64,000 bases of DNA from Macrostomum lignano. Its lineage: Eukaryota. The position numbers were made by a program, and so were the translations under genes. Position 1 is the first letter of the stretch. Every line of letters starts with the position of its first letter. The stretch lies in assembly GCA_002269645.1 (NCBI GenBank), contig NIVC01000004.1, positions 186,001-250,000 on the forward strand, given 5' to 3'. Below, one piece after another: positions 16,046 to 48,411 of this stretch. Under the pieces are notes generated by a model. That model saw only the letters and a program-made list of their open reading frames with translations, made no database searches and was not told the origin of the DNA.

Positions 16046-17533
16046 GAGAGAGAATCTCACCCCAGTGTCCCCTTTCCCTGAGAGAATCTCACCCCAGTGT
16101 CCTCTCTCCCTGAGAGAATCTTACCCCAGATTCCCCTCTTCCTGAGAAAATCTCACACCTAGTGTCCTCTCTCCCTGAGAGAATCTTACCCCAGATTCCC
16201 CTCTTCCTGAGAAAATCTCACACCTAGTGTCCTCTCTCCCTGAGAGAATCTCGCCCCTAGTGTCCTCTCTTCTGAGAGAATCTCACCCCAGTGTCCTCTC
16301 TCCCTGAGAGAATCTCACACCTAGTGTCCTCTCTCCCTGAGAGAATCTCACCCCAGTGTCCCCTTTCCCTGAGAGAATCTCGCCCCTAGTGTCCTCTCTC
16401 CCTGAGAGAATCTCACCCCTAGTGTCCTCTCTCCCTGAGAGAATCTCACACCTAGTGTCCTCTCTCCCTGAGAGAATCTCGCCCCTAGTGTCCTCTCTTC
16501 TGAGAGAATCTCACCCCAGTGTCCTCTCTCCCTGAGAGAATCTCACACCTAGTGTCCTCTCTCCCTGAGAGAATCTCACCCCAGTGTCCCCTTTCCCTGA
16601 GAGAATCTCGCCCCTAGTGTCCTCTCTCCCTGAGAGAATCTCGCCCCAGATTCCCCTCTCCCTGAGAGAATCTTACCCCAGTTTCCTCTCTCCCTGAGAG
16701 AATCTCGCCCCTAGTGTCCTCTCTCCCTGAGAGAATCTCACCCCAGTGTCCTCTCTCCCTGAGAGAATCTCGCCCCTAGTGTCCTCTCTCCCTGAGAGAA
16801 TCTCACCCCAGTGTCCTCTCTCCCTGAGAGAATCTCACCCCTTGTGTCCTCTCTCCCTGAGAGAATCTCACCCCTAGTGTCCTCTCTCCCTGAGAGAATC
16901 TCACACCTAGTGTCCTCTCTCCCTGAGAGAATCTCACCCCTAGTGTCCTCTCTCCCTGAGAGAATCTCACACCTAGTGTCCTCTCTCCCTGAGAGAATCT
17001 CACCCCTAGTGTCCTCTCTCCCTGAGATAATCTCGCCCCTAGTGTCCTCTCTCCCTGAGAGAATCTCGCCCCTAGTGTCCTCTCTCCCTGAGAGAATCTC
17101 ACCCCTTGTGTCCTCTCTCCCTGAGATAATCTCGCCCCTAGTGTCCTCTCTCCCTGAGAGAATCTCGCCCCTAGTGTCCTCTCTCCCTGAGAGAATCTCA
17201 CCCCTAGTGTCCTCTCTCCCTGAGAGAATCTCACCCCTAGTGTCCTCTCTCCCTGAGAGAATCTCACCCCTAGTGTCCTCTCTCCCTGAGAGAATCTCGC
17301 CCCTAGTGTCCTCTCTCCCTGAGAGAATCTCACCCCTAGTGTCCTCTCTCCCTGATAGAATCTCGCCCCTAGTGTCCTCTCTCCCTGAGAGAATCTCGCC
17401 CCTAGTGTCCTCTCTCCCTGAGAGAATCTCACCCCAGTGTCCCCTTTCCCTGAGAGAATCTCGCCCCTAGTGTCCTCTCTCCCTGAGAGAATCTCACCCC
17501 TAGTGTCCTCTCTCCCTGATAGAATCTCACCCC
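16046..17533. repeat. 33-bp minisatellite, ~45 copies
   Basis: Unit CCTGAGAGAATCTCACCCCTAGTGTCCTCTCTC. Confidence 0.95.
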
Positions 17534-17942
17534 TGTACATCGCCCCCCCCCCATGAAAAGGCTGGAATGCCAGCGCTGCACTCCAGGTGAACAGCTTTCA
17601 AAATTGCAGCAGACGTGGAGCCAAGGCGAGGCGAGAACCGCAACCAACCATTCAGGAGAAGCAAAATTTCACACAGAGTCAAAGAGCAGCTTCTCGAGGT
17701 CAGGCAGGCCAGGTGGCAGTGTGAGCACTGATCTCAGCTGAGACACCTTATCAGCACTGCATGGAATAGGGACAGGAGAGAAAGAGGCGAGCCTCAGATA
17801 GGGACGCAGAAGTGGCTTGCCGAACTTTGATAAAAACTCACCTGAGAACCCGCTCTCCGGGTTTGAGGCTCTCCTAGAAGAAGACCTGCCGGTGCGCACT
17901 AGAAAATCGAAAGCTTTAATTTGCTTCCCAAATCAACAAACA

Positions 17943-27905
<9,963 letters not shown>

Positions 27906-30802: not shown

Positions 30803-33800
30803 ATGGCGGAGAGGCGCCGCAAACAGGGCCGGCCGGGCGGCTCCCGGATGGCCGTCATCACCGGTCACAGTCCGGTGCTGAATGCCTACTACGACGGCGA
30901 TCTGGACAAGCTGCGTGAGCTGCTGGTGGCGGACGAAGACAACCTGGTCAACCCCGGCAACACCGGCCAGCCTCTGTGCTTCCTGGCCGCGCGAGAGAAC
31001 CGCAAGGGGGTCCTGCGCGTCATCCACGGCGTCAGCGGCGACCTGCGCTACCTTGGCTACACGGACAACGAGGGCGAAAACTGCCTGTTCACTGCCATCC
31101 GCTCCAGCAGCCTGCGGGCCGCCAAGTTCCTCCTGAGCGTCGGCTTCGACCCGAACCAACAAAACCGACACGGCCAGACGCCGCTGCACATCGCCTGCAT
31201 CGTCGACGACCCGCACTTCGTGCACCTCCTGCTCCATTCTGGCGCGGATCCAAACGTCTGCGACTCCAGTGGCAATTTGCCGCTGCACCGCGCCTGCCAG
31301 GAGAACCAGCCGCGAATGGTGCGGATGCTGCTGCTGCACACCCGCGACATCAACGCCAAGGCCGCGGCGAACCGGACGGCAATGCACTTTGCTGCCCTGT
31401 CGCAGTCGCTGGACCTGCTGACCCTCCTCCTTGCCGCCGGGGCCAGCTGCCACGTCTTTGATTCTGACCGCCGCTCGCCCATGGACATTGTGCTGTCCCT
31501 GGGCAACCTTATCATCATGACGGGCTTGTCTGAGTACTTCACGCACCGCGTGAAGGGCACCATAGACGATCTGGAGACGCTGCAGCACTCTCCAGAATTC
31601 GGCGAAGTGCTCACTACGTTGCAGGCGGTGGACGACGACCTGGAGAACCCGGTTCAGCTCGTGTGCGACTTCCACGGCCTGCAGCCGGTGGAGCTGACGG
31701 AAGACATTCAGGCGGGCATCCTGCAGAAGATCCGCGATCGCGAGCGCCTCGACTTTATGCAGTTTCGCAGTCTGCTCCGTCACGTGATCAGCGGCGACTT
31801 GTCCACCAAGCTGGTAGAAAGAGGCATCCTGCCAGAGTTCGCCGAGATGGTCGCCAAGCAGGTGCTGTACCGCGAAGACGTCGAAATGCTGCGCCTGCTG
31901 ATGTTTGGCACCACGCTGTGGCGGCACCTGTCGGCCGAGCTGGAGAAGCATATCATGACTCTGTACAACGACTGCGGCGAGCTGGGCTCCACCGGCATGC
32001 AGAACATGCGCTGCCGGTTCTTCGGCGACCGAAAGACTGGCCAGGTTTCGGAGGCGCTGATGCTGAAGTTCTTTGCCAAGTTTCTCAACATGTCCAACAT
32101 GCTGCCGTGCGAGCATGAGCACAGCAGCTTCATGCGCAACCCCATCAAGACCCTGCCAGTGTGGTCCGTGCTCACCGGCCGCTTCCTACTCACGGAGGAG
32201 CTGCTGAAGGCCGAGCAATTCGACATGCTGCCCCTGGGCCTGTTCTGCATCCGGCTGCTGCGCCGGCTGGCCAAGAGCCGCCAGATGCCGCGGCCTTCGA
32301 AGAGCCTCATGAACAGCGTCGCTGACAAGATCGAGAGCGTCTGCATGAAGCTGCTGCGGGCTGTGGACAAACTTGACGTAAGCGAGAAGAAGGCCGTGTC
32401 CATAAACTACATCCGGCAGAAGATGCCGGCGTACTCCAACCTCACCTGCATGTCGCTGGCTGCCGGAGGCGAGTGCGAAGCCTTCATGGTGATGAACACC
32501 GTGCAGACCGCTGTGGAGCGCGAGTGGTACCAGAAGCTGTTCCATCTCTCCCATTGGCGCCGGGAGATCATCATCCTCCTGGGGATCGTGCCGTACAACC
32601 CCATTCTCTACTGGGCGCTGCAAATCTCGGCCAGCAAGGACGCGGGCGACACCGTGCTGCACTCGCAAGAAGAGGCTCCCGTCCCAGTGGCGCAAGACAC
32701 GCCCGACTCGAGCGGGCACGGGCACGAAGCCGGGCAGAAGGAGAAGACGATGCCTACCATACAGGAAGAAGGCGCCGCTGAGGATCCCGATCACATCGAC
32801 GAGCATCATGACTTGGTTCACGAGGATCCCATGATTGAGCATCACGATGAGCACCACGGTGACAGCCTGCCCCACGACGAGAGAGATAGAGACCAGGAGC
32901 ACCTGATTGAGCCAGAAGGTCACGGCCACGGTCACGGGCACGAAGAGGCTAAGAGTCAAAGTAACGGTCACGGTCATGGTCACGGTCACGGTCACGGTCA
33001 CGGTCACGGTCACGGTCACGGTCACGCGCATGACAAGCCAGAGGCTGCGCCGAGGTCACGGGTGGTGCAGGCAATCATAAACTACGGGTCCACCTGCACG
33101 GAGTTCTACCTGACGCCTTGTGTTCGATTTCACTACCACATCATCTCGCACTTGGCCTTCATCGTCATGTTCTCCTACGTGATGATTGTGCACTTCAGCT
33201 ACCGACTGCACGTTGTCGAGACCATCGTGTACCTGTTTGTTCTCGGCTTCCTGCTCGAGGAGCTGCACGAGATGAACGTCGCCAGACAGAAGGGCACCAT
33301 GAAGAGCTACTTCCGGGACGGCTGGAACATGATTGACAACTTCGGCATCGCGACCTGCCTGCTGGGCTTCTGCATGCGGTTGGTCCGCCTGCCCCTGGCG
33401 AAGCACACCGACATCCAGCATATTTCCTTCGGTGACGACTACTTCTGGTGGACCCGATTCGTGCTCATAATATCCTGCCTGGTGTTCTGGCTGCGCCTGC
33501 TGTACGTGTCCACCGTGATGGTGACGCTCGGTCCCAAGCTGAAGATGATCTCCGTGATGATCACACGCGACCTCGTGCCGTTCCTCATCATGCTGGCCAT
33601 CATGATGTTCGGCTTCGGGCTCGTCATCCACGGCCTGCTGTTTCCCAACGGGTTCGCCATGGGCAATCCACACAAGAGGTCCGGGCTGCGAATATTCGAG
33701 AGCACCTTCCGCATCACCTTCTACGCCATGGTTGGCGACTACAGCATGGACATCATCACCGGCAACGACTGCGAGAAGGACGCCCGCTGCCCGCACCCGG

Positions 33801-34291
33801 TGGGCAAGGTGGTCGTGCCCAACATCATTATGACGGTCTACATCATCATCGTGACCATCCTGTTGCTGAACCTTATCGTGGCCTCCTTCTCCAAGACTGT
33901 TGACGAGATTCAAAAGAAGTCCTTCGCCATGTGGCAGTTCGAGCGCTACGACCTGCTTGAGGAGTTCCGCGTCCGGTCGCCGGTGCCGCCGCCCTTCAAC
34001 ATCATCGGCGAGCTGCTGCGCGGCCTGGCCGCCCTGGTCACCATGGTGCGCAGGCGCAGCGGCGCCGTCCCCTTCAGCAAGACGAAGTTCAACAAGCACC
34101 GGGTGATCAAGTTCCTCACCCTGCAAGCCTTCGCCCTGCGCGGCCAGCGCAAGCAGCTGGTGGGCGAGCTGGAAATCGAGGACCCGGACAAGTTGCTGCC
34201 AGAGATCGGGCGGCAGCTCAAGCGGGCCGAGCAGCAGCTGCAGTTCCTGCAGAAGATCTCGGGCGAAGAGGAAGCCATCGATGATGATTAG
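30803..34291 (+). CDS. Intronless ankyrin-repeat TRPM-like cation channel, 1162 aa, with a His/Gly-rich insert
   Basis: About 6 ankyrin repeats (GQTPLHIAC, GNLPLHRAC); MHR3/4-like segments (PVWSVLTGR, LTCMSLAA..VQTAVEREW); 6 TM segments (YFRDGWNMID, LGPKLKMISVM); pore YAMVGDY with paired Cys; TRP helix WQFERY followed by PVPPPF. Confidence 0.92.
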   Translation: MAERRRKQGRPGGSRMAVITGHSPVLNAYYDGDLDKLRELLVADEDNLVNPGNTGQPLCFLAARENRKGVLRVIHGVSGDLRYLGYTDNEGENCLFTAIRSSSLRAAKFLLSVGFDPNQQNRHGQTPLHIACIVDDPHFVHLLLHSGADPNVCDSSGNLPLHRACQENQPRMVRMLLLHTRDINAKAAANRTAMHFAALSQSLDLLTLLLAAGASCHVFDSDRRSPMDIVLSLGNLIIMTGLSEYFTHRVKGTIDDLETLQHSPEFGEVLTTLQAVDDDLENPVQLVCDFHGLQPVELTEDIQAGILQKIRDRERLDFMQFRSLLRHVISGDLSTKLVERGILPEFAEMVAKQVLYREDVEMLRLLMFGTTLWRHLSAELEKHIMTLYNDCGELGSTGMQNMRCRFFGDRKTGQVSEALMLKFFAKFLNMSNMLPCEHEHSSFMRNPIKTLPVWSVLTGRFLLTEELLKAEQFDMLPLGLFCIRLLRRLAKSRQMPRPSKSLMNSVADKIESVCMKLLRAVDKLDVSEKKAVSINYIRQKMPAYSNLTCMSLAAGGECEAFMVMNTVQTAVEREWYQKLFHLSHWRREIIILLGIVPYNPILYWALQISASKDAGDTVLHSQEEAPVPVAQDTPDSSGHGHEAGQKEKTMPTIQEEGAAEDPDHIDEHHDLVHEDPMIEHHDEHHGDSLPHDERDRDQEHLIEPEGHGHGHGHEEAKSQSNGHGHGHGHGHGHGHGHGHGHAHDKPEAAPRSRVVQAIINYGSTCTEFYLTPCVRFHYHIISHLAFIVMFSYVMIVHFSYRLHVVETIVYLFVLGFLLEELHEMNVARQKGTMKSYFRDGWNMIDNFGIATCLLGFCMRLVRLPLAKHTDIQHISFGDDYFWWTRFVLIISCLVFWLRLLYVSTVMVTLGPKLKMISVMITRDLVPFLIMLAIMMFGFGLVIHGLLFPNGFAMGNPHKRSGLRIFESTFRITFYAMVGDYSMDIITGNDCEKDARCPHPVGKVVVPNIIMTVYIIIVTILLLNLIVASFSKTVDEIQKKSFAMWQFERYDLLEEFRVRSPVPPPFNIIGELLRGLAALVTMVRRRSGAVPFSKTKFNKHRVIKFLTLQAFALRGQRKQLVGELEIEDPDKLLPEIGRQLKRAEQQLQFLQKISGEEEAIDDD

Positions 34292-34951
34292 GCCGGGGAA
34301 TGCCGGACCGCTGACGAACTAAATTTAGCTGCTTATCTGTTTTAGTAAAAAAGCTAACCCACACGAGCTCATTAGAATACCTGATTAGTTAAAAGTGACG
34401 GAGGGGCCTGCAAAGAGCTGCAAATTTGCGTTCACGGGGGGCGTTCTTGTCTGTCCAGAGCAAAAATTTAACCAACCTGTCAATATCGACTAACCTACTT
34501 CTAAATGTACTTACTGTACTCAACTCCCAGCTGTGTGGGCTGCTTTACTTTCCCAAAGATTAACTAATAGAAACTCAAACGTCTGTTCTGCTAGTGAATG
34601 TTATTTTTTTATTAACCCTTCGTCAGGCTTCAGTTGAATCAAAGTAAAAAAAAAGCTATTAACATCAGCGCTCACGAGCGCGCACGTATCTGGAATTCAA
34701 AAGGTGCTCTTCAGAAACTGATTTCTACATCTACCAGAATACAGTAATTAGCGGCTCATAATACACTAACATTTTATGTAGCTCGTCGATTGCTAAGATA
34801 TTGTATTGGCAACAAAAACGTAACATGTGCTCATCTCTCTACTCACACAGTAAGAAAACGTTAAAAAATTTTTATTCCGGCGGGGATATTTCTAGCCGTT
34901 TCCCCATAAAAAACAAAGGAACTTGCCAGATTGCCACTGCAAAAAATATTT

Positions 34952-35035
34952 TGTCAGAAGTGGGATTCGAACCCACGCCCTCAGAAGAGGACTGCGACCT
35001 GAACGCAGCGCCTTAGACCACTCGGCCATCCTGAC
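34952..35035 (-). tRNA. trnL-CAG: tRNA-Leu(CAG), intronless, long variable arm
   Basis: Minus strand reads GTCAGGATGGCCGAGTGGTCTAAGGCGCTGCGTTCAGGTCGCAG...GGGTTCGAATCCCACTTCTGACA. Anticodon stem CTGCG/CGCAG around TTCAGGT; A and B boxes present; T6 Pol III terminator at 34946-34941. Confidence 0.97.
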
Positions 35036-35668
35036 TTGAGTATTAAGGCTGGAGCTGAGTGCTTATGAAAATTACACTAGAGAATGCTTTGCAAAGATAA
35101 GAGATTGCCGTCAACCAGCCGATAGGCAGCTACCCAAAATTAGGCTAATCGATCTATTTTTAGCTGGCCACACAATTATGTACGCAACTGCATGGAACAT
35201 GTAGTATTTACATGTAGACTTCGAAATTCCACATTTATTAACTATTAACTACTAAATTAACTATTATTTGTGAGTTTAAAAACAACTGTTTTTGAGAACA
35301 CCTAGGTACACGGTAATTAAAAATTAATTTTAAATGACAAATTTTAAGTAAGTTTTGTAGTTCACATGTAGATGTAATTATGCATCATCTAATAATGAAA
35401 TTTTATATATCGTTTAAAAACCAAAAGAGTGACCAATGAAATGTTCAAATAACTACAAGTGTATACAAGGTTACAGTTTACTTTATAAGATTACCAACAG
35501 CATTTTTCGATAGAAAAACAAGCTATAAGTTATAAAAAATAATTGGCTCGGGCACAAAAATGGAATAAAAATCTTGGACGAAAATTCTTTTATATACTTT
35601 ATTTTATATTAATGCTGCAAGTTCTTTCAACTTTGCAATTGAAAAAAAATTTTTTATGCTGCTGAGTC

Positions 35669-36700
35669 ATGTCACACGATTCTCTGACGGTAAGAGAACT
35701 GCGCATGGCATTGCGTGCTAAAGGCTTGCAAACCGTAGGCAACAAGCGCACCCTATTGGAGAGACTTCTGCAGTCTCAAGGCTCAGTGGACACGGGACCC
35801 ATCGATGAATCGGACACCAGCAATCCATCGAGAAGGCGAGGGCCCGACGACGGGACGGCGGCGGTCGGCGGCGGCGAGGCGGCAGGAGGGACCCACGGTA
35901 CTGGCGACCTGGACCGGGACCTGCGGGAGGCAGAGAAGCAGCTGCGCTTGCTGACAATTCGTCGGGACCAAGCGCGCCTGGAAGCCGAGATCCGTCAGCT
36001 GGACCGCCGTGCCGATGAGCCGCAGCGGCGACCTGCAAATGCCTCAGTGCCCGGTGAGTACTCAAGCCTTGAGGATTTAGTGCTGGGACCTACTGTCAGA
36101 GTGCCGGATGAGGTGCAGCAGGCGGGGCAGCAGCACCCGAATGCGTACCGGGTGCCGGAGTTCATCAGCGCTCGCGAGCGGCTGGCGCTGAACAAGTCAA
36201 GTCAAGCCAGCAAGCAGGCCGCCCTGGACAGCCTCTCGGTTGGCGACTGGATCACCGGAAACGCCAACGCGCTGATGCAGATGCTGAAGGACGGCAGACT
36301 CCTCGTCCTCCGTGATGGCGCTATCGACATGTCGGAGCTGCTGGAGTACCTGAAGCACACGGCAAAAATTGGCGACCTCCTCGATCTCGGATTCGACCGC
36401 GGCCGCGTTTTGCGCTATGATGATGAGTACAGAGCGCAGCAGGCTGAGGCCGGCGCCTGGGACAGCTCGGTGACCGACCTGGGTCTGGTGGCGGCACACC
36501 TGATGGCTCCGAATCTTCAACTGCAGGCCGGCTCAGCGGGCAGGTCATCAGCAAAGCGACCGGTCTGCTTCGACTTCAACAAGGTGTCCGGCTGCCAGCG
36601 CAACCCGTGTCGTTTCGCACACAGTTGTAGGCGCTGCGGCCAGGCGCACTCGGAGGCCTCCTTCCACAGAGCGGAGGGCGGCCAGGCGGCAAAAAACTGA
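35669..36700 (+). CDS. gag: Retrotransposon Gag-like protein (SAP domain, coiled coil, C-terminal Cys/His zinc finger), 343 aa
   Basis: SAP consensus LTVRELRMALRAKGLQTVGNKRTLLERL; C-terminal CFDFNKVSGCQRNPCRFAHSCRRCGQAH. Confidence 0.85.
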   Translation: MSHDSLTVRELRMALRAKGLQTVGNKRTLLERLLQSQGSVDTGPIDESDTSNPSRRRGPDDGTAAVGGGEAAGGTHGTGDLDRDLREAEKQLRLLTIRRDQARLEAEIRQLDRRADEPQRRPANASVPGEYSSLEDLVLGPTVRVPDEVQQAGQQHPNAYRVPEFISARERLALNKSSQASKQAALDSLSVGDWITGNANALMQMLKDGRLLVLRDGAIDMSELLEYLKHTAKIGDLLDLGFDRGRVLRYDDEYRAQQAEAGAWDSSVTDLGLVAAHLMAPNLQLQAGSAGRSSAKRPVCFDFNKVSGCQRNPCRFAHSCRRCGQAHSEASFHRAEGGQAAKN

Positions 36701-36772
36701 TGGACGGGGTTCAGCGGCAGGGGTCTCTTAACATCGAGTCGCCCGCCCCTGCCGCTGCTTCTGTCGAACCCC
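36691..36772 (+). promoter_or_regulatory. Putative -1 programmed ribosomal frameshift signal between gag and pol
   Basis: Slippery heptamer A_AAA_AAC (36691-36697) in the gag frame; 8-nt spacer; stems 36706-36712/36766-36772 (7 bp) and 36713-36723/36746-36756 (11 bp). The -1 frame is the RT frame. Confidence 0.75.
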
Positions 36773-38672
36773 AAAAGGAGGGCGACTCAAGCGGGACCCT
36801 CTCCACCGACTTGCGCCTTGAAGCCTGGCGCCTCGAGCTGGCCGACACGGAGATGCCAACGAAGCTCGCGCAGTTCGTTTTGAGCGGTGTGAAGGACGGT
36901 TTCCGCATCAGGAACGTCAGCAGTCCGGTGGACTCTGTCGAGCAGGAGAACTACGGCTCCATCAATCAGCATCGAGTCGAGGTTCAGGCCCAAGTCCGCC
37001 GGGAACTGCAAGCTGGAAGATATCGCGTTAGCGCCAAGCCGACTATTGTGAGCGCGCTGGGCGCCATTCCGAAGTCCGGGGGCGGCATCCGGCTCATCCA
37101 TGACTGCAGCCAGCCCCAGGGTCGGGCCGTCAATGATTTGTTTGCTTGCCAGCAGAAGCTTCGGTTTTCTTCGGCGGCTGCCTTTGCCAGGAAGCTGCGC
37201 CAGGACATGTACATGTGTAAAGTCGACCTGAGCCAGGCCTACCGGTCTTGCGGCATTCACCCGGACGACCACTGCCTCACCGGTCTGAAGTTCACGTTCG
37301 AGGGCGAGGCGGAGCCGACCTACATGGTGGACACCCGGCTGCCGTTCGGAGCGGCAGCATCCGTGAGCAGCTTTTTCCAGATCAGCAACGCCATTCGGTT
37401 TATGATGCTCAAGCGCAGGTTCTTCAACTTCGAGGTCTACATGGACGACTTCGGCTTCGCGGGTTCGCTGACTGAGTGCTGGCGCTTTTACAACAAGCTG
37501 ACGCAGCTGCTGCAGAGCCTGGGCCTGACTGTCAACTGGAAGAAGTGCGTGCAGCCGACGCAGGAGATGTGCTTCCTGGGCATTCAGTTCAACACGCAGT
37601 CGGGGCTGATGAGTCTGCCAGAGACGAAGGTCGAGGAGCTGCAGGCCTGCCTTGACCTCTGCTGCACAAAGCGGCGGATCTCCAAGCACGAGTTGCAGAA
37701 GCTGGTGGGCAGGCTCAACTGGGCCTGTCAGGTGGTCTGCAACGGCCGGCCGTTTCTGCGAGACCTGATCGACCGCGTCAACGACTTGTCGAGCCCGAAG
37801 GATCGGCTGTTGGTGGATGGCCAGTTCAAGAGCGTCCTGAGCTGGTGGAAAGTTGCTCTGCGGCAGCAGCCAGGTCGCGAGCTCTGGCCTGCTGCCAGGA
37901 GGCCGGTTGCCATGGAGACGGACGCCTGTCTGGTGGGGCAGCGGCTGTTCTGAGAGATCCGGCTGGTTCTGACTGGTGCTATCTGCAGTGGGAAGTCGAC
38001 GCTGGGAGCGAGTTCAGCGATTGCTGCATCAACTACAAGGAGGCTGCCGCGGTGCTGCTGGCGTTGCTGCACTGGCGCCGTCAACTGCACAACTGCCGGA
38101 TCGCTGTCTACTGCGACAATGCTGCAGCCTGCGCGATTATCAACAAGGGGTCATCCAGGGAGCCCCGGCTGTTGCGGCTGCTGCAGACTGTTGCTCTGCT
38201 GTGCCTAAAGCAGAACATTGTGGTCACCGCCCACCATGTGCCCGGCCGGTTTCAGCTGTTTGCCGACGCCGCCTCCCGCCTGCATTGTCGGCAGGAGTTG
38301 CTGAATTTTCTGTTGCGAGCCTATGCAACCGCCTCTGTTTGCCCGCATGAATTTGCGGGACATGCGCTTAGCCCTGCCTCCGCCGCCTTTCTTTTTTTAC
38401 AGGTCGCCTCCCTGGGTCTCTCGACGCTGCCGCCGCCAAACTGCTCCAGCAGGCCTACGCATCATCGTCCAAGAGGTCGCTGTCATCTGCTGTCCGCTCC
38501 TGGCAACGCTTCTGCCGAGAGCGGCGGCTCGACCCACTCGGCTGTCGGGCGGAGGATCTCGCAAACTACGTCGGCCAGCTCGTGGACGGCCGGCTCAGCT
38601 CCTTCGGCAGCGTCCGCGTGCATATCAGCGCTCTGTCCGCCAGTTTCCGACTGGCGGGAGTGCCGGACCTGA
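36700..38672 (+). CDS. pol: Reverse transcriptase-RNase H (pol), interrupted by a 1-nt deficit in a G run at 37935-37938
   Basis: RT motifs RLIHDCS, KVDLSQAY, RLPFG and YMDDF in ORF 36700..37953. RNase H TDA is in the RT frame; INYKE, YCDN and ADAASR continue in ORF 37845..38672. One extra G gives METDACLVGAAAVL. Confidence 0.88.
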
Positions 38673-39379
38673 CCAGGCACCCGCTGCTGCACCTGGTTCT
38701 GCGGGGAGCCAAGCGCGAGCTGGGGTCGGAGCCGAGTCGCAAGCTGCCGGTGTCGCCAGACCTTTTGTCGAGACTGCGGCTGCAAGTCGACAGCTCGAAT
38801 CCTGTGCAGGCGGCCTGCTGGGCTGCGGTCATGTGCGCTTGGTGGGGGATGTTCAGGAAGTCCAGCCTGCTGCCGCGAGGGCGCGCCGATCCGCCAGTGC
38901 TGCGACTGAGCTCGCTGGCAAGATGCCCCGAAGGCCTGCTTCTGACGTCCAGCTTCGGGAAGACCAACCAGTACGGTCGGACGCATCGCGTGCTGCTGCC
39001 AGAGTTGACTTCGGGCCACCCGCTCTGTCCAGTGGCGGCACTGCGAGGCCACCTGCGCTGCAACCGGCTGAAGCGGCGGCAGCAGGGCCTGTTTTCATTC
39101 AGCAGTGGATCGTCCGGTCACGCATCTCTGACGTCCCGGAGGCTCGATGTACAGTTCAGGTCGTGGCTCGGCAAGGCGGGAGTGCCGGCGGCCGGGTTTT
39201 CTGTGCATAGCCTGCGGCGAGGCGCCGCCACCTGGGCGGCCCGGTGCGGCCTGTCAGTGCGGGAGATCCAGTGCGTGGGTGACTGGCGCAGCGACGCAGT
39301 GAGCGTCTACCTGTCCCGCGATGACACGGCTCTGCGTGCGGCGCGCAAGCTTGCTGTTGCGGCGCTTGACCAAACCTGA
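38403..39379 (+). CDS. Tyrosine recombinase (integrase) of the retrotransposon; no in-frame ATG for its N-terminal domain, probably expressed by splicing from gag
   Basis: The frame is open from 38372. N-terminal core-binding region AYASSSKRSLSSAVRSWQRFC; catalytic R (FRKSS), K (KTNQ), HSLRRG, GDWRS and VYL all intact. Acceptor TTTCTTTTTTTACAG ends at 38402. Confidence 0.88.
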
Positions 39380-40545
39380 CGTGTTTCGCGGTTTTTTTTG
39401 AAGAAAGGTTTTGGGCTCCTTTTTTGTTTGCTTGTCCGCTTTTGCTTGCCTCTGCTTGGTCTGCTTTTGCTCTAGTCTGTTTTCTTGCTGCTTTTGGTGT
39501 TGGGGGGAGTGCATGGCAGCCTTCCCTGTCCTCCTCGCTGTTCCTGCGCCATTTGCTGCTCTTGAGCTTGCTGCGTTCGTCTTCTGGGGTGGGCAGTGGG
39601 CACTAATGGCTAGTTTGCGCGGGCTGCGCTAACTGGCGTTTGTGTACGCTGCCCACCCCTGCCCCTCCCCCGCGGCTTTCCCCCACCCCGGTGTTGGGGG
39701 GGGGGGGTTGCGTGGCGGGGGTTTTATACCCCGCGGTTGGCTCTTTGGCCTCGCTGTCGCATTGCAATTGAAAAAAAAATTTTTTTTCGTATCCTGTCAC
39801 TCTTTTAATCCTGCTTTGATCCGTTCTAACTGTTGTCAATAATGCTTGAATATTTTCTCGTAATCGGTCTGAAATATACGGGGGGGAGTGCATGGCAGCC
39901 TTCCCTGTCCTCCTCGCTGTTCCTGCGCCATTTGCTGCTCTTGAGCTTGCTGCGTTCGTCTTCTGGGGTGGGCAGTGGGCACTAATGAAATTTTATATAT
40001 CGTTTAAAAACCAAAAGAGTGACCAATGAAATGTTCAAATAACTACAGGTGTATACAAGGTTACAGTTTACTTTATAAGATTACCAACAGCATTTTTCGA
40101 TAGAAAAACAAGCTATAAGTTATAAAAAATAATTGGCTCGGGCACAAAAATGGAATAAAAATCTTGGACGAAAATTCTTTTATATACTTTATTTTATATT
40201 AATGCTGCAAGTTCTTTCCGCATTGACTAGAGGGTTATACGAATTGACTCAACCAGATAAATTCATTAATATCAAAATTATTTGCAAAGGAGCGTAAAAT
40301 GCTTGTTTAGTGAAATAATAACAAAATACTTATTTAATTAACTCATTATATTACTAAATCTGTTTAAGATAACAAATTATTGAACGTTAAATATAGTTAA
40401 TAATAGTTCCACTTCTTTTACAGCCTTTAAAAGCACATTGTCTTTTAGAGTCGTCTACGTTTTTCGAATTCCCCTGAGCAACAAACTTTTATTGCTGCTC
40501 GAATCAAATTGTCACCTTGTCATGTAAATAGTTCCATGCAATAAA

Positions 40546-43500
40546 ATGCCAAAAAGCAAGACGAGCGTATCGACCCGTCAGCTAACGCTGACATCCCAAT
40601 CATTGTGAGTACAGTTTTCTTTCTATCTGTCTTGAACTACTCATATATAACAAAATTTCTGGCTTTTAAATTCTAATATTTACTCTCCTACTAGTCTCCT
40701 AGTCCTATCTATGAATACCTTAAACCATTCTATCTCTTTGACTGTCTGTTTTGGATGAATCGCCTGCGTATAAAAAGGTTTATTTTAAAAAAAATACCTA
40801 TTGTAAAGGAGAAAACTATTTTTGACAATGAAGTTCTATTAGCTTTTGTATTTTAGATTATTATTAAGTTTACTTTACTGTAAGACGCGATATGTCATAT
40901 GATATCAGCCACATGATGTCACATAATTTCCTCAAGTAGAATTTCTAAAATACTATGACACTATGAATTTTATCATTTTTCTTTTTTATCATGGATCCAA
41001 CAAAATACAACAGTCCCGAAATACAGGTTATGGAGTAGTACCAATCAGGTAAGTATATATATTTAAAGCCAAGTTAAAATCAATTTATAAGTTAATTTTG
41101 AGAATTCTGCATAAAAATACATATGTGTTTTTGCATTCAAAATGATCTAATGGTCAAAATATTCTAAATATGATATTTTTGCTAAAAAATACCCTTCATA
41201 CTCAGGGGCTCCCTCGCCGCCGAGGCGCACGATGACGACTGCAGTTCGAACTCGTCCGACACCTGCACGGAGGTGGACGCCGACTACGAGAATCTGATGT
41301 CCCGCATCCGCCAGCAGAACGAGGAGATCCGGCAGCTTCAATCGGAGAACAAGCAGCTGGCGGAGGAGTTGGACCAGGAGCGCAGCCTGGGCTCCAAGCA
41401 GCTGCAGGAACTGGAGGCCGCCTCCAAGCTGGGTCAGTGGCGGATGAGGGGGGCTGAGGACCTCTGAACCCCCAATAGACATATAATGTTGGTTGTTTGA
41501 ATGGGGGGGGGTAACTTTAAAGTGCTACGCGTCCTTTCACTACCAAGTGAAATCAGTTTTTCAATCCAGCAGCTGTGAAATCAAAGCCAATTCATTTTTT
41601 CCATTGGTCCCGACCTTCAATCGCAGACTGCCGGAAGACTTCAAGCGGTCAGACTAACACTTACTAACCACCTGCCCCGGTCTCGTAAGTGAAATTCTGC
41701 TTGCACTAACCAATAACAATGCTGCTTTTTTATTGCTTTTTATGCACACACACCGTAATGAACAGTCACTCAGAACTTTTTAAATACTATTTCTTAGAAT
41801 GCATCGCAGCAGAGATTTCGGCAGCGACTCTCTGCTTATTTGCTTTTGCTCGCTTTCCCATTGCAGCTGAGCGGCAGATCCAGGAGCTGTCGGCCGAGCT
41901 GGTCCGCTCCAGGGAGGCTGGCAAGCGGGCGCAGCACGGCTATGAGACCCGCGCCATCCGCATGCACGAGGAGACGCTGCGCGACCCGTTTGAAGAGCGG
42001 CGTCGGCTGGACATACGGCTGCAGCAGCTCGAGCTGGACGCCGACCGGATGAACTCCGACCTGCGCAGCTCGGCCGAGGAGCGGGCAAAGCAGCGGGAGG
42101 TCATCAGGCAGGCTGAGGCCGACCGGGACGCTGCGCAGGTGAGCTGGCCTGTCTTCTGTGTGTCACTGCCTGTCTTCTGTGTGTCACTGCCTGTCTTCTG
42201 TGTGTCACTGCCTGTCTTCTGTGTGTCACTGCCTGTCTTCTGTGTCACTGCCTGTTTTCTGTGTGTCACTGCCTGTTTTCTTTGTGTGCTGTCACTGTCG
42301 CATTTCACCGTTGCCATGGGGACGCCCAGCAAGAGCCGCAGTCCCACTTGTGTGCAGTTAATCCATCACCTCTCAAGCCTGAGCCTCTCTGCCCAAGATT
42401 AGGCTTTGAGAATGTTTACCAAAAATAGCCACCGGAATGCGGGCAGGCGATGAATCAAATGCGAGTTTAAATTCCTGCTGCGGCCACGGCTTTGTTGCTC
42501 AGAAATGAAGTCTTCTCCCGGCTAAGCAGATTTCCCTGCTAGATTGGAAAGGAGATTCCAATAAAAATATTTAAATGGCCGCCTTGAGTTTCTCCAAGAT
42601 TTTCAAGAAGTCAACTTCATTTGGCTTTGAGGATTGGCTGTCCTTTCGCAATTTTTTATTGCCTTCCTGGATATTCCAGGACTGCACTGGCTGTCCTGGG
42701 TATCTCAGACTCTGTCCTGGGTATCTCAGACTCTGTCCTGGGTATCTCAGACTCTGTCCTGGGTATCTCAGACTCTGTCCTGTGTATCTCAGACTCTGTC
42801 CTGTGTATCTCAGGCTCTATCCTGGGTATCTCAGGCTCTATCCTGAGTATCTCAGACTCTATCCTGGGCATCTCAGATTCTATCCTGGGTATCTCAGACT
42901 GCACTGGCTGTCCTGGGTATCTCAGACTCTATCCTGGGTATCTCAGACTCTATCCTGGGTATCTTAGACTCTATCCTGGGTATCTCAGACTCTATCCTGG
43001 GTATCTCAGACTCTATCCTGGGTATCTCAGACTCTATCCTGGGCATCTCAGATTCTATCCTGGATATCTCAGACTGCACTGGCTGTCCAGGGTATCTCAG
43101 ACTCTATCCTAGGTATCTCAGACTCTATCCTAGGTATCTCAGACTCTATCCTAGGTATCTCAGACTCTTTCCTGGGTATTTCCGACTCTATTCTATCCTG
43201 GGTATCTCTAACTGTCATAGGTATCTCAGACTGCACTGAGATCCTGGGTGTCTCAAACTGCACTGGCTGTCCAGGGTATCTCAGACTCTATCCTGGATAT
43301 CTCAAACTGCACTGGCTGTCCAGGGTATCTCAGACTATCCTTCTGGGTATCTCAGACTCAGGTTTAGGTAGTCTGGAATGCAATTCCACTAAGACAAGGA
43401 CTAGCGGGATTAAACAAAAAGTACATTTCACTAATTCGCACACTTCCAGTTCAATCAGCTTAACTTTGCTTCCCCTACCAGGTGGCTCCAGGATTTGAAA

Positions 43501-47047: not shown

Positions 47048-47361
47048 GTATCCTAATACAGACGCACCTATTGTTACGTACTTCTTGAAGAGCAGAATTT
47101 TACTGTGACTAGGTCACACGTTGGAACTTCAAAATTAATTATTGAATTTTGCTCAAGATGCACACGAACCTGGGGTCCCGCCCGCTCGCTTGCACCAGCA
47201 TTTCGTGCTAATTTGGCAGCAAAAGCACTTACTGAAAATTATTAATAACATGAGTAACGAGCTGCGCTACTCATAGTAGCAAGTCTGAGGTTGGAAAGGG
47301 GCGTTTTTATTTTATGAGCCATGCTTCTGTTTTCGCTACTGACTTTTCTATTTCTATGACA

Positions 47362-48097
47362 CAACTCAGAGACACTGAGCACTCTCTGGAACCTCATGAC
47401 ACCACTCAGAGACACTGAGCACTCTCTGGAACCTCATGACACCACTCAGAGACACTGAGCACTCTCTGGAACCTCATGACACCACTCAGAGACACTGAGC
47501 ACTCTCTGGAACCTCATGACACCACTCAGAGACACTGAGCACTCTCTGGAACCTCATGACACCACTCAGAGACACTGAGCACTCTCTGGAACCTCATGAC
47601 ACCACTCAGAGACACTGAGCACTCTCTGGAACCTCATAACACCACTCAGAGACACTGAGCACTCTCTGGAACCTCATGACACCACTCAGAGACACTGAGC
47701 ACTCTCTGGAACCTCATGACACCACTCAGAGACACTGAGCACTCTCTGGAACCTCATGACACCACTCAGAGACACTGAGCACTCTCTGGAACCTCATGAC
47801 ACCACTCAGAGACACTGAGCACTCTCTGGAACCTCATGACACCACTCAGAGACACTGAGCACTCTCTGGAACCTCATAACACCACTCAGAGACACTGAGC
47901 ACTCTCTGGAACCTCATGACACCACTCAGAGACACTGAGCACTCTCTGGAACCTCATAACACCACTCAGAGACACTGAGCACTCTCTGGAACCTCATGAC
48001 ACCACTCAGAGACACTGAGCACTCTCTGGAACCTCATAACACCACTCAGAGACACTGAGCACTCTCTGGAACCTCATAACACCACTCAGAGACACTG
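47362..48097. repeat. 40-bp minisatellite, ~18 copies
   Basis: Unit ACCACTCAGAGACACTGAGCACTCTCTGGAACCTCATGAC, no spacers. Confidence 0.96.
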
Positions 48098-48411
48098 ATA
48101 AACTCTATCAGGCGACACTCCTGTCTGTTATGGACCCTAATCGCAGCCAATGTACATTGGAGAGCGAATTCCATGGGTGCATTGCGGGACAAGGCAAGTG
48201 AAGCGCTGCTCATTGGCTGCCCGAACGCGCCCAGCGGCAGCTGAAGCGGTTTAAATCGGCAGATCTCTTGGGCATTGGCTGGCTGTGGGTAGGCGGAACG
48301 GCTCGGAGAGCAAGCAGACTTAAGCACTGGCTGAACCGGCATGGCGCAGATGGCCAGTCGGATCGGCTCCCAGATGCGCAGGCGATGAATGGCTGCCGCA
48401 GGCCAGTTGCA

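What the first reader, a model, noticed from the sequence alone, without database searches (positions are those of the whole stretch)
35669..39379. Retrovirus-like three-product expression programme in a tyrosine-recombinase retrotransposon
Seen: one transcription unit carries (1) Gag, (2) a -1 frameshift cassette leading into RT-RNaseH (~1000-aa fusion) and (3) a phase-matched donor/acceptor pair that removes the zinc finger, RT and RNase H and fuses the Gag N-terminus to the ATG-less recombinase. Established: retroviruses use this logic for Gag, Gag-Pol and spliced env; how DIRS-order elements express their overlapping ORFs is poorly characterised as far as I know. Inference: both enzymes get a Gag-derived tag for co-assembly into the particle at controlled stoichiometry.
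Basis: partly seen in the sequence, partly recalled or inferred. Interest (0 to 1): 0.85.

Follow-up and report, generated by a model that had tools for sequence, protein, structure and literature searches.

The report
Ngaro-like retrotransposon with retrovirus-style expression
A jumping gene that inserts with a tyrosine recombinase seems to make its proteins the way retroviruses do (a coat-like protein, a ribosomal-frameshift fusion to the copying enzyme, and a spliced message that gives the start-codon-less recombinase the front end of the coat protein), and the same signals recur in relatives as distant as amphioxus and acorn worms.

Summary
The element (about 35633-39987) has the gene order gag, RT/RNase H, tyrosine recombinase (YR) and no methyltransferase, so it is Ngaro-like.

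1. **Frameshift site.** A_AAA_AAC (36691-36697) abuts the gag stop, with RT in the -1 frame. A hairpin follows after 8 nt. Heptamer and hairpin are kept in four further contigs representing three other lineages. Three more distant relatives instead have gag and RT in one frame, separated by a single stop.
2. **Splice sites.** A GTGAG donor lies in the disordered gag linker (36054). A pyrimidine tract plus CAG precedes the ATG-less YR (exon 2 starts at 38403). Both are phase 1 and both recur in every related locus that covers them.
3. **Gene models.** Two RefSeq models, from Branchiostoma and Glandiceps, are built exactly this way: gag N-terminus, an intron holding the zinc finger, RT and RNase H, then YR.

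Correction: the window copy's RT/RNase H gene is broken by one frameshift, so this copy does not encode the ~1000-aa fusion.

No RNA or protein evidence was available. The co-assembly purpose remains inference.

The parts
35393..35635 (.). Left copy of a 243-bp AT-rich direct repeat that brackets the element. It is unclear whether it belongs to the element or is duplicated host DNA.
   Evidence: 98-99.6% identical to 39983-40225. The related contig L001 has no counterpart.
35633..35655 (+). Short repeat A1 of the split direct repeats; probable left end of the element proper.
   Evidence: Repeated at 39762-39784 at 96% identity. The order A1-[ORFs]-B1..A2..B2 matches the Ngaro scheme (PMC8547959, PMC4157794).
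35669..36700 (+). gag-like ORF of 343 aa, intact. Layout: SAP domain (aa 5-35), long helix (aa 79-116), disordered linker (aa 120-156), helical domain (aa 160-280), Cys/His knuckle near the C-terminus.
   Evidence: ORF list. Pfam SAP E 5.7e-07. AlphaFold model. Foldseek matches SAP domains only. Third-codon-position substitution bias against L001.
35669..36053 (+). Proposed exon 1: gag codons 1-128 plus the first base of a split Gly codon (SAP domain plus helix).
   Evidence: Pfam finds SAP in this fragment.
36054..36059 (+). Proposed 5' splice site GTGAGT, phase 1.
   Evidence: GTGAG or GTAAG/GTAAT at the same place and phase in L001, L006, L009, L004, L014 and L015, and less surely L005. The first base of the codon varies (Gly/Cys/Ser) while GT-GAG stays fixed.
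36054..38402 (+). Proposed intron of 2349 nt, holding the gag C-terminal domain and zinc knuckle, the frameshift site, RT and RNase H.
   Evidence: Intron lengths in relatives are 2331-3291 nt.
36691..36697 (+). Slippery heptamer A_AAA_AAC in the gag frame, followed directly by the gag stop at 36698-36700.
   Evidence: Identical heptamer plus TGA in L001, L006, L009 and L007. The preceding codon varies (Ala/Pro/Ser) but always ends in A.
36706..36772 (+). Predicted frameshift-stimulating hairpin: a 7-bp lower stem and a 12-bp upper stem, 8 nt after the heptamer.
   Evidence: RNAfold dG -38.3, z -3.17. The 10-bp core helix pairs in 4 of 4 lineages with 2 double-sided changes. The lower stem has two compensatory changes between the window and L001.
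36697..38672 (+). RT/RNase H (pol) gene, entered in the -1 frame. It is broken in this copy by one frameshift, with no other stop.
   Evidence: Pfam RVT_1 E 4.3e-14 and a weak RT_RNaseH match. L001 has a single 661-aa ORF. No methyltransferase domain was found.
38380..38402 (+). Pyrimidine tract plus CAG: the proposed 3' splice site.
   Evidence: The same position and phase 1 in L001, L002, L003, L004, L005, L008, L010, L014 and L015. Window-L001 identity is 0.86 here against 0.68 overall.
38403..39379 (+). Proposed exon 2: the tyrosine recombinase (324 codons plus stop), intact, with no start codon of its own.
   Evidence: Translation. Pfam Phage_integrase E 1.8e-4, below the family cut-off. 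Conserved H, R and Y columns. 7668 relatives at E<=0.001. Selection switches to this frame right at 38403.
39502..39608 (+). Repeat B1 of the split direct repeats.
   Evidence: 100% identical to 39881-39987.
39762..39784 (+). Repeat A2.
39881..39987 (+). Repeat B2; probable right end of the element proper.
39983..40225 (.). Right copy of the 243-bp AT-rich direct repeat.

Best explanation
This is a young copy of a Ngaro-like tyrosine-recombinase retrotransposon, with one frameshift in pol. Its family most likely expresses three products from one genomic RNA.

1. **Gag.** Translated from the unspliced RNA.
2. **Gag-RT/RNase H.** A minority of ribosomes slip -1 on A_AAA_AAC just before the gag stop, helped by a hairpin 7-8 nt downstream. 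More distant relatives reach the same end by reading through a single in-frame stop.
3. **Gag N-terminus fused to YR.** The spliceosome removes a ~2.35-kb phase-1 intron that runs from the disordered gag linker to just before the recombinase. The resulting mRNA would encode about 453 aa: the gag N-terminal module (SAP domain plus long helix) joined through a split Gly codon to the recombinase, which has no start codon of its own.

**Shown:** the signals, their positions and phases, their conservation, where coding constraint switches frame, and matching two-exon gene models in other phyla.

**Inferred:** that slipping and splicing actually occur, their efficiencies, and what the shared N-terminal module is for.
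For: **Frameshift**
- The heptamer and adjoining stop are identical in the window, L001, L006, L009 and L007, although the preceding residue differs.
- Hairpins of -34 to -45 kcal/mol follow in all four lineages.
- The core helix is 100% paired with two double-sided changes. The lower stem reads GGGGTTC/GAACCCC in the window and GGGGCTG/CAGCCCC in L001.
- An ATG overlapping the stop exists only in the window, L001 and L006, so reinitiation is not the conserved feature.
- L004, L005 and L014 have gag and RT in one frame separated by a single stop. In two of them this is TGA followed by CTA. This is the frameshift-or-readthrough alternation seen among retroviruses (own knowledge).

**Splice**
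- Each gag ORF has only 1-3 GTRAG sites. One always lies just after the helix, in phase 1, inside a poorly conserved linker. AlphaFold predicts that linker to be disordered.
- A pyrimidine tract plus CAG in phase 1 precedes YR in 10 of 10 loci that cover the site.
- No lineage has a conserved ATG at the start of YR.
- Between the window and L001, substitutions mark the RNase H frame up to 38402 (6, 4, 11) and the YR frame from 38403 (14, 39, 20).
- The RNase H-frame stop lies a variable 24-267 nt beyond the acceptor.
- RefSeq models XP_019639177.1 (Branchiostoma belcheri) and XP_077986280.1 (Glandiceps talaboti) are two-exon genes. Exon 1 is the gag N-terminus, the intron holds the zinc finger, RT and RNase H, and exon 2 is YR. 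Both are phase 1 with a split Gly codon.
Against: - No RNA-seq, ribosome-profiling or peptide data could be consulted.
- In the window alone both splice motifs are at chance frequency.
- The hairpin covariation rests on four sequences: 46 of 500 shuffles did as well. Hairpin z-scores in the relatives are modest, -1.6 to -1.8.
- The stem lies in coding sequence, which also constrains it.
- The RefSeq models are automated, and their transcript support could not be inspected.
- The M. lignano model P0011 uses the acceptor-equivalent but a donor inside RT.
- In L005 RNase H and YR share a frame, so splicing is not obligatory everywhere. Its donor is also the least certain.
- The promoter and polyadenylation site are unknown.
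Confidence: 0.6

Rival explanations
1. The recombinase is made without splicing. Ribosomes translating RT/RNase H shift -1 into the YR frame near 38393-38403, giving a Gag-RT-RH-YR polyprotein. The pyrimidine tract is a slippery site, not a splice signal.
For: - YR is in the -1 frame relative to RNase H, with an overlap, in the window, L001, L004, L008 and L010.
- The window has T_TTT_TTA in the RNase H frame at 38393-38399.
- Coding constraint switches frame exactly there.
- In L005 RNase H and YR are in the same frame, so a polyprotein exists in at least one relative.
Against: - L001, L002 and L008 have no X_XXY_YYZ heptamer anywhere in the overlap. Those in L004 lie about 100 nt upstream.
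- What is conserved is pyrimidine tract plus CAG.
- This model leaves the conserved phase-1 GTGAG in the gag linker unexplained.
- It also leaves the two-exon RefSeq models unexplained.
Confidence: 0.12
2. The splice-like motifs are by-products of coding constraint and base composition. The gene models are predictor artefacts. YR is translated by some other route, such as an internal transcript, a non-AUG start or an internal Met.
For: - The motifs are at chance frequency in the window.
- The RNase H-frame peptide is itself conserved up to the CAG, which could preserve the tract.
- GT-GAG encodes x-Glu.
- Automated models can invent introns to bridge frames. P0011 appears to skip the frameshift region in that way.
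Against: - The donor codon changes its amino acid (Gly/Cys/Ser) yet keeps GT. It sits in the least conserved, disordered part of gag.
- Phase 1 is kept on both sides in the window, L001, L004 and L005 independently of any gene model. In L014 and L015 the models' junctions fall at the homologous places.
- No conserved start codon exists for YR.
- The conserved YR N-terminal domain begins immediately at the acceptor.
Confidence: 0.15
3. RT/RNase H is made by termination-reinitiation at the overlapping stop and start (TGATG) rather than as a Gag fusion by frameshifting.
For: The window, L001 and L006 have an ATG overlapping the gag stop, and a structured region follows.
Against: - L009 and L007 keep the heptamer, the stop and the hairpin but have no ATG there.
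- The RT frame is open 70-120 nt upstream of the stop.
- Distant relatives use an in-frame stop, which implies a fusion protein.
Confidence: 0.05

Closest known systems
Ngaro retrotransposons (YR retrotransposons without a methyltransferase; for example the Cafeteria burkhardae Ngaros, PMC8547959; scheme in PMC4157794)
   Same: - Gene order gag-like ORF, RT/RNase H, YR on one strand.
- No methyltransferase and no DDE integrase.
- Internal repeats lie downstream of YR in the order A1-[ORFs]-B1..A2..B2.
   Different: - A1/A2 are only 23 bp, and spacers separate B1, A2 and B2.
- An extra 243-bp direct repeat brackets everything.
- gag carries a SAP domain.
- The papers read describe three separate ORFs and say nothing about how they are expressed.
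Retroviral expression programme (Gag; Gag-Pol by -1 frameshift or stop readthrough; spliced subgenomic mRNA for env). Own knowledge.
   Same: - A heptamer of the X_XXY_YYZ type at the end of gag, followed by a structured RNA.
- Frameshift and readthrough alternate among related lineages.
- One donor in or near gag and one acceptor in front of the last gene.
   Different: - The spliced product is the integration enzyme, not an envelope protein.
- It is an in-frame fusion carrying about 128 gag residues.
- In retroviruses the integrase is part of Pol. Here it is taken out of Pol and expressed separately.
Ty1/Copia elements, which make a spliced subgenomic RNA (Arabidopsis survey, PMC5580714)
   Same: Splicing of the genomic RNA is used to set the ratio of products from a compact retroelement.
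   Different: There splicing yields a gag-only message. Here it removes the back half of gag and all of pol to express the recombinase.
DIRS-1 of Dictyostelium (PMC7192593, PMC3266345)
   Same: A YR retrotransposon with overlapping ORFs and terminal or internal repeats thought to rebuild the ends.
   Different: DIRS-1 has inverted terminal repeats, an internal complementary region, a methyltransferase domain, and YR overlapping pol. None of these is seen here.
RefSeq models XP_019639177.1 (Branchiostoma belcheri) and XP_077986280.1 (Glandiceps talaboti, named 'integrase/recombinase xerD homolog')
   Same: Two-exon structure with the gag N-terminus spliced to YR, phase 1, a split Gly codon, and an intron holding the zinc finger, RT and RNase H.
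   Different: - Only 27-31% identical in YR.
- Exon 1 has a helix-rich region but no SAP domain.
- The gag/RT junction is an in-frame stop in L014.
- They are annotated as ordinary host genes, not as parts of a transposon.

Membership tests
Ngaro-like YR retrotransposon | Reverse transcriptase and RNase H domains | tested here: met
   RVT_1 E 4.3e-14. RT_RNaseH is weak in the window (E 3.5e-4) and above the cut-off in L001.
Ngaro-like YR retrotransposon | Tyrosine recombinase instead of a DDE integrase | tested here: met
   Phage_integrase E 1.8e-4, 21.8 bits against a cut-off of 27.1. Invariant H268, R271, R272 and Y302 columns. 1478 relatives at E<=1e-10. No integrase domain in any ORF.
Ngaro-like YR retrotransposon | No methyltransferase domain (this separates Ngaro from DIRS1/PAT; PMC4157794) | tested here: met
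   Pfam finds only RVT_1 and RT_RNaseH in the 661-aa pol of L001, the 559-aa pol of L004 and the window ORFs.
Ngaro-like YR retrotransposon | Split direct repeats A1-[ORFs]-B1A2B2 | tested here: inconclusive
   B1/B2 are 107 bp and 100% identical. A1/A2 are 23 bp and 96% identical. The order is right, but spacers of 153 and 96 bp intervene and an unexpected outer 243-bp repeat is present. Only one copy was available.
Ngaro-like YR retrotransposon | Placement within the Ngaro clade in RT and YR trees | not tested
   No reference Ngaro, DIRS or PAT sequences were retrieved and no tree was built.
DIRS1-like element | Inverted terminal repeats plus an internal complementary region | tested here: not met
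   No inverted repeats in 34800-40800.
PAT-like element | Methyltransferase domain together with split direct repeats | tested here: not met
   No methyltransferase domain.
LTR retrotransposon / retrovirus | LTRs plus a DDE integrase and protease in pol | tested here: not met
   243-bp flanking direct repeats exist, but no integrase or protease domain was found.
Programmed -1 ribosomal frameshift site | X_XXY_YYZ heptamer in the upstream frame within the ORF overlap | tested here: met
   A_AAA_AAC at 36691-36697 in the gag frame, conserved in 5 contigs.
Programmed -1 ribosomal frameshift site | Stable downstream RNA structure after a short spacer | tested here: met
   Hairpins start 8 nt (window) and 7 nt (L001) after the heptamer. 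In L009 and L007 the main stem starts 10-11 nt after it. Pairing is kept with compensatory changes. These are predictions only.
Programmed -1 ribosomal frameshift site | Observed trans-frame product | not testable with these tools
   No ribosome-profiling or proteomic data were available.
Spliced subgenomic retroelement mRNA | Consensus donor and acceptor in compatible phase, conserved among relatives | tested here: met
   8 donors and 10 acceptors, all phase 1.
Spliced subgenomic retroelement mRNA | Junction observed in transcripts | not testable with these tools
   The only evidence is indirect: two-exon RefSeq models in two other phyla, whose transcript support could not be inspected.
Retroviral-type Gag (capsid) | Capsid-like fold | tested here: inconclusive
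   AlphaFold mean pLDDT is 58.8. Foldseek against the PDB matches only SAP domains, with no hit at E<=0.001. The 'gag' label rests on position and a Cys/His knuckle.

The most novel reading that the evidence does not exclude
A phase-1 intron that joins the gag N-terminal module to a start-codon-less recombinase is an old, general feature of animal Ngaro-like retrotransposons. It is seen here in a family whose nearest relatives are in a flatworm, and in cephalochordate and hemichordate elements. On this reading the integration enzyme is deliberately kept out of the Gag-Pol polyprotein. It is made from its own spliced message and shares a DNA-binding or oligomerising head with Gag. That would explain how these overlapping, ATG-less recombinase ORFs are expressed, and why genome annotations list 'uncharacterized' or 'xerD-like' two-exon genes that are really transposon products.
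Probability: 0.5. Interest if true: 0.75.

Novelty: new variant of a known kind. Interest (0 to 1): 0.62.

Why it matters
Tyrosine-recombinase retrotransposons are the least understood order of retroelements. The papers read here list their ORFs and repeats but do not say how the overlapping ORFs, often lacking a start codon, are translated.

A conserved frameshift-or-readthrough junction plus a conserved gag-to-recombinase intron would give a concrete model. Existing transcript, footprint and peptide data could test it.

It would also:
- show that retrovirus-like control of product ratios arose, or was kept, outside the LTR elements;
- suggest that Gag and the recombinase share an N-terminal DNA-binding and helical module;
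- flag a class of mis-annotated 'host' genes in animal genomes.

Tried and rejected
- **Exact look-ups.** The window's gag and the neighbouring channel protein are not on record, so the source genome was not identified. The best YR relatives are Macrostomum lignano gene models at 50% identity or less. This hints at a flatworm-like host but does not prove it.
- **Word-indexed protein searches.** YR and gag gave only 6 and 4 hits. The metagenome scan gave 4 distant loci, of which only L010 was useful.
- **Rfam.** Nothing but the tRNA.
- **L007 as a spliced-and-reinserted copy: rejected.** Its junction joins the RT N-terminus to YR residue ~26, at neither the donor nor the acceptor. It is an internally deleted copy.
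- **P0011 as proof of the splice: not accepted.** It uses the acceptor-equivalent but a donor in RT and skips the frameshift region.
- **T_TTT_TTA at 38393 as an RNase H-to-YR slippery site: rejected.** It is not conserved.
- **TGATG reinitiation: rejected.** The ATG is not conserved.
- **A short RNase H-to-YR intron suggested by GGTGAGT in L008: rejected.** Its length of 57 nt does not change the frame, and the donor is absent elsewhere.
- **Motif enrichment in the window: none**.
- **Capsid fold for gag: not found**.
- **The RT-to-RNase H frame change as a programmed event: rejected.** L001 and L004 have one continuous ORF.


Full report
**What is in the window**

Between about 35633 and 39987 lies one copy of a retroelement. 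It has four consecutive open stretches on the + strand:
- a gag-like ORF, 35669-36700, 343 aa;
- an RT frame at -1 to gag;
- an RNase H frame;
- a tyrosine-recombinase (YR) frame, open from 38372 to the stop at 39377-39379.

Pfam finds four domains:
- SAP at gag residues 5-35;
- RVT_1, E 4.3e-14;
- a weak RT_RNaseH match;
- a weak Phage_integrase match, 21.8 bits, below the 27.1 cut-off.

No ORF of the window or of its relatives has a methyltransferase, protease or DDE integrase. No inverted repeats are present.

The repeats are:
- a 23-bp pair, 35633-35655 and 39762-39784;
- a 107-bp pair, 39502-39608 and 39881-39987, 100% identical.

Their order is A1-[ORFs]-B1..A2..B2, which is the Ngaro arrangement (PMC8547959, PMC4157794). 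The whole is bracketed by an unexpected 243-bp AT-rich direct repeat, 35393-35635 and 39983-40225. The window holds only this one copy.

**Relatives**

All were read as they stand.

| Loci | Source | Similarity to the window |
|---|---|---|
| L001, L002, L006 | Logan contigs | about 70% nucleotide identity |
| L009, L008, L007 | JGI sample 3300040801 | about 53% amino-acid identity |
| L004, L003 | same JGI sample | 41-50% amino-acid identity |
| L005 | ENA | 27-36% amino-acid identity |
| L010 | metagenome contig | 24% in YR |

A full HMMER scan with the YR found 7668 relatives.
- The best hits are Macrostomum lignano gene models, with P0011 at 50% identity.
- Further down are RefSeq models from Branchiostoma, Patella and Glandiceps, in which 140-220 extra N-terminal residues precede the YR.

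**State of this copy**

- In L001 RT and RNase H form one 661-aa ORF, and in L004 one 559-aa ORF.
- In the window they are in different frames, so its pol gene carries one frameshift and no other stop.
- gag and YR are intact, and the repeats are 98-100% identical.
- L003 has about three frameshifts in pol. L005 has one internal stop and two frameshifts. Both are degenerate.
- L007 is an internally deleted copy.

**Signal 1: the gag/pol junction**

- A_AAA_AAC (36691-36697) is in the gag frame and is followed at once by TGA. The RT frame is open for 70 nt upstream.
- The same heptamer plus TGA occurs in L001, L006, L009 and L007. The residue before it differs (Ala, Pro, Ser), but its codon always ends in A.
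- RNAfold predicts a hairpin in all four lineages, -33.7 to -45.2 kcal/mol, with z from -3.2 in the window to about -1.6.
- The hairpin starts 8 nt after the heptamer in the window and 7 nt in L001.
- A 10-bp core helix pairs in 40 of 40 cells, with two pairs changed on both sides. With only four sequences, 46 of 500 shuffles do as well.
- The lower stem differs between the window and L001 by two compensatory changes.
- Window-L001 identity peaks at 0.90 over 36691-36720, against 0.68 overall.
- The ATG overlapping the stop is absent from L009 and L007. This argues against reinitiation as the conserved mechanism.
- In L004, L005 and the amphioxus element L014, gag and pol share one frame and are separated by a single stop. 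In L004 and L014 this is TGA followed by CTA.
- A switch between frameshift and readthrough among relatives is what one expects if a Gag-Pol fusion at low ratio is the selected outcome (own knowledge of retroviruses).

**Signal 2: the donor**

- GTGAGT at 36054 follows the first base of gag codon 129 (phase 1).
- Each gag ORF has only one to three GTRAG sites. One always lies at this place, just after the long helix, in phase 1:

| Locus | Donor coordinate |
|---|---|
| Window | 36054 |
| L001 | 620 |
| L006 | 431 |
| L009 | 242 |
| L004 | 820 |
| L005 (less sure) | 1577 |
| L014 | 8434 |
| L015 | 4515 |

- The surrounding protein is the least conserved part of gag: 0.56 nucleotide identity between the window and L001.
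- The AlphaFold model places it in a disordered linker between the SAP-plus-helix module and the C-terminal helical domain.
- The split codon encodes Gly, Cys or Ser in different lineages while GT-GAG is kept. This points to constraint on the nucleotides rather than the protein.

**Signal 3: the acceptor**

- A pyrimidine tract ending in CAG stops at 38402.
- The conserved YR N-terminal domain begins immediately after it, and no lineage has a conserved ATG there.
- The same tract plus CAG, in phase 1, is present in all ten loci that cover the site, including L010, L014 and L015.
- Window-L001 identity is 0.86 around the acceptor.
- Substitutions between the window and L001 fall on third positions of the RNase H frame up to 38402 (6, 4, 11 by coordinate class). 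From 38403 they fall on third positions of the YR frame (14, 39, 20). Coding constraint therefore changes frame at the acceptor.
- The RNase H frame then runs on for a variable 24-267 nt without constraint.
- The window's tract contains T_TTT_TTA in the RNase H frame. L001, L002 and L008 have no slippery heptamer anywhere in the overlap, so a second frameshift is unlikely.
- Donor and acceptor phases agree in the window, L001, L004 and L005. The predicted product in the window is 128 codons, a split Gly codon and 324 codons.

**Independent gene models**

- XP_019639177.1 (Branchiostoma belcheri, 482 aa) spans 4.3 kb. Exon 1 is the first 144 codons of a gag ORF. The intron holds the gag zinc finger, RT and RNase H. 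Exon 2 is the YR.
- XP_077986280.1 (Glandiceps talaboti, 502 aa, named a xerD homolog) has the same build.
- Both junctions are phase 1 with a split Gly codon and CAG|GT, as in the window.
- These are automated models, and I could not see their transcript support. They nonetheless place splice sites at the homologous spots in elements only 27-31% identical in YR.
- Several identical paralogous models exist in amphioxus, as expected for a transposon product.

**Interpretation**

The best reading is a three-product programme:
- Gag from unspliced RNA;
- Gag-RT/RNase H by a -1 slip, or by readthrough in other lineages;
- a spliced mRNA whose product starts with the gag N-terminal module and continues as the recombinase.

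What that module does is open.
- In the window's lineage it is a SAP domain plus a 38-residue helix.
- In the deuterostome elements exon 1 is helix-rich without SAP.
So are recombinase multimerisation and DNA or chromatin tethering.
- The label 'gag' rests only on position and a Cys/His knuckle, because no capsid fold was recovered.

**What is known**

- Five full-text searches and six papers on DIRS, Ngaro, PAT and VIPER elements gave definitions of the groups. None described native splicing or programmed frameshifting in this order.
- Subscription papers, including the original Ngaro descriptions, were not searchable. Prior mention therefore cannot be excluded.
- Splicing of LTR-retrotransposon RNA to set product ratios is established for Ty1/Copia (PMC5580714) and for retroviral env (own knowledge).
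- The mechanism is therefore a new variant of a known kind, and the element is a new member of the Ngaro-like group.

**Limits**

- There is only one copy in the window.
- The host is unknown.
- The promoter and poly(A) site are unknown.
- No expression data were available.
- The number of lineages is small for covariation statistics.
- The element ends and the 243-bp repeat are unresolved.

Noticed in passing
window 35393-35635 and 39983-40225: A 243-bp AT-rich direct repeat (98-99.6% identical) brackets an element that already has its own split direct repeats. It contains TATATA about 75 nt upstream of the gag ATG. The heptamer cgcattg occurs just before A2 and again just after the right copy. 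It is unclear whether this is part of the element or duplicated target DNA.
   Followed up: partly
window 34952-35035 (minus strand): A tRNA-Leu(CAG) gene lies about 360 bp to the left of the 243-bp repeat. Whether the family targets tRNA genes was not examined.
   Followed up: no
window 30803-34291 (+): An uninterrupted 1162-aa ORF for a TRP-like cation channel (ankyrin repeats, TRPM2-like domain, Ion_trans) with a long His-Gly repeat. This is the host gene next to the element. The exact protein is not on record in the public collection.
   Followed up: partly
whole window (for example 1102-2481, 16048-17534, 18958-20490, 47356-48098): The window is packed with dozens of 13-68-bp minisatellite arrays and several 4-bp microsatellites. 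Many of the long 'ORFs' outside the element are just these repeats.
   Followed up: no
window 38393-38399: T_TTT_TTA sits in the RNase H frame inside the pyrimidine tract, exactly where the coding frame changes. It looks like a second slippery site but is not conserved in relatives.
   Followed up: yes
L004 1533-1541; L014 8997-9005; L005 2263-2265: Distant relatives have gag and pol in one frame separated by a single stop. In two of them this is TGA followed by CTA. This suggests stop-codon readthrough in place of frameshifting.
   Followed up: partly
L007 1-1429: An internally deleted family member. It keeps the end of gag, the heptamer, the hairpin and the RT N-terminus, then joins directly to YR about 26 residues in. 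It may be a non-autonomous derivative.
   Followed up: partly
P0011 (UniRef A0A1I8G0Z6, Macrostomum lignano, 758 aa): A gene model annotated 'SAP domain-containing protein' that is really gag plus the RT N-terminus plus YR of a related element. The join to YR is exactly at the acceptor-equivalent. Other M. lignano models fuse the YR to unrelated host-like proteins, such as ones named methionine synthase or PH domain protein.
   Followed up: partly
L005 3613-4884: In the most distant flatworm-type relative, the RNase H C-terminus and the YR lie in one open frame, so a pol-YR polyprotein is possible there.
   Followed up: no
L001 1-37 and 4141-4177: The Logan contig's ends overlap by 37 nt, giving a 4140-bp unit. 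This fits a collapsed repeat, a tandem array or a circular form of the element. It also implies a longer A repeat than the window copy shows.
   Followed up: partly
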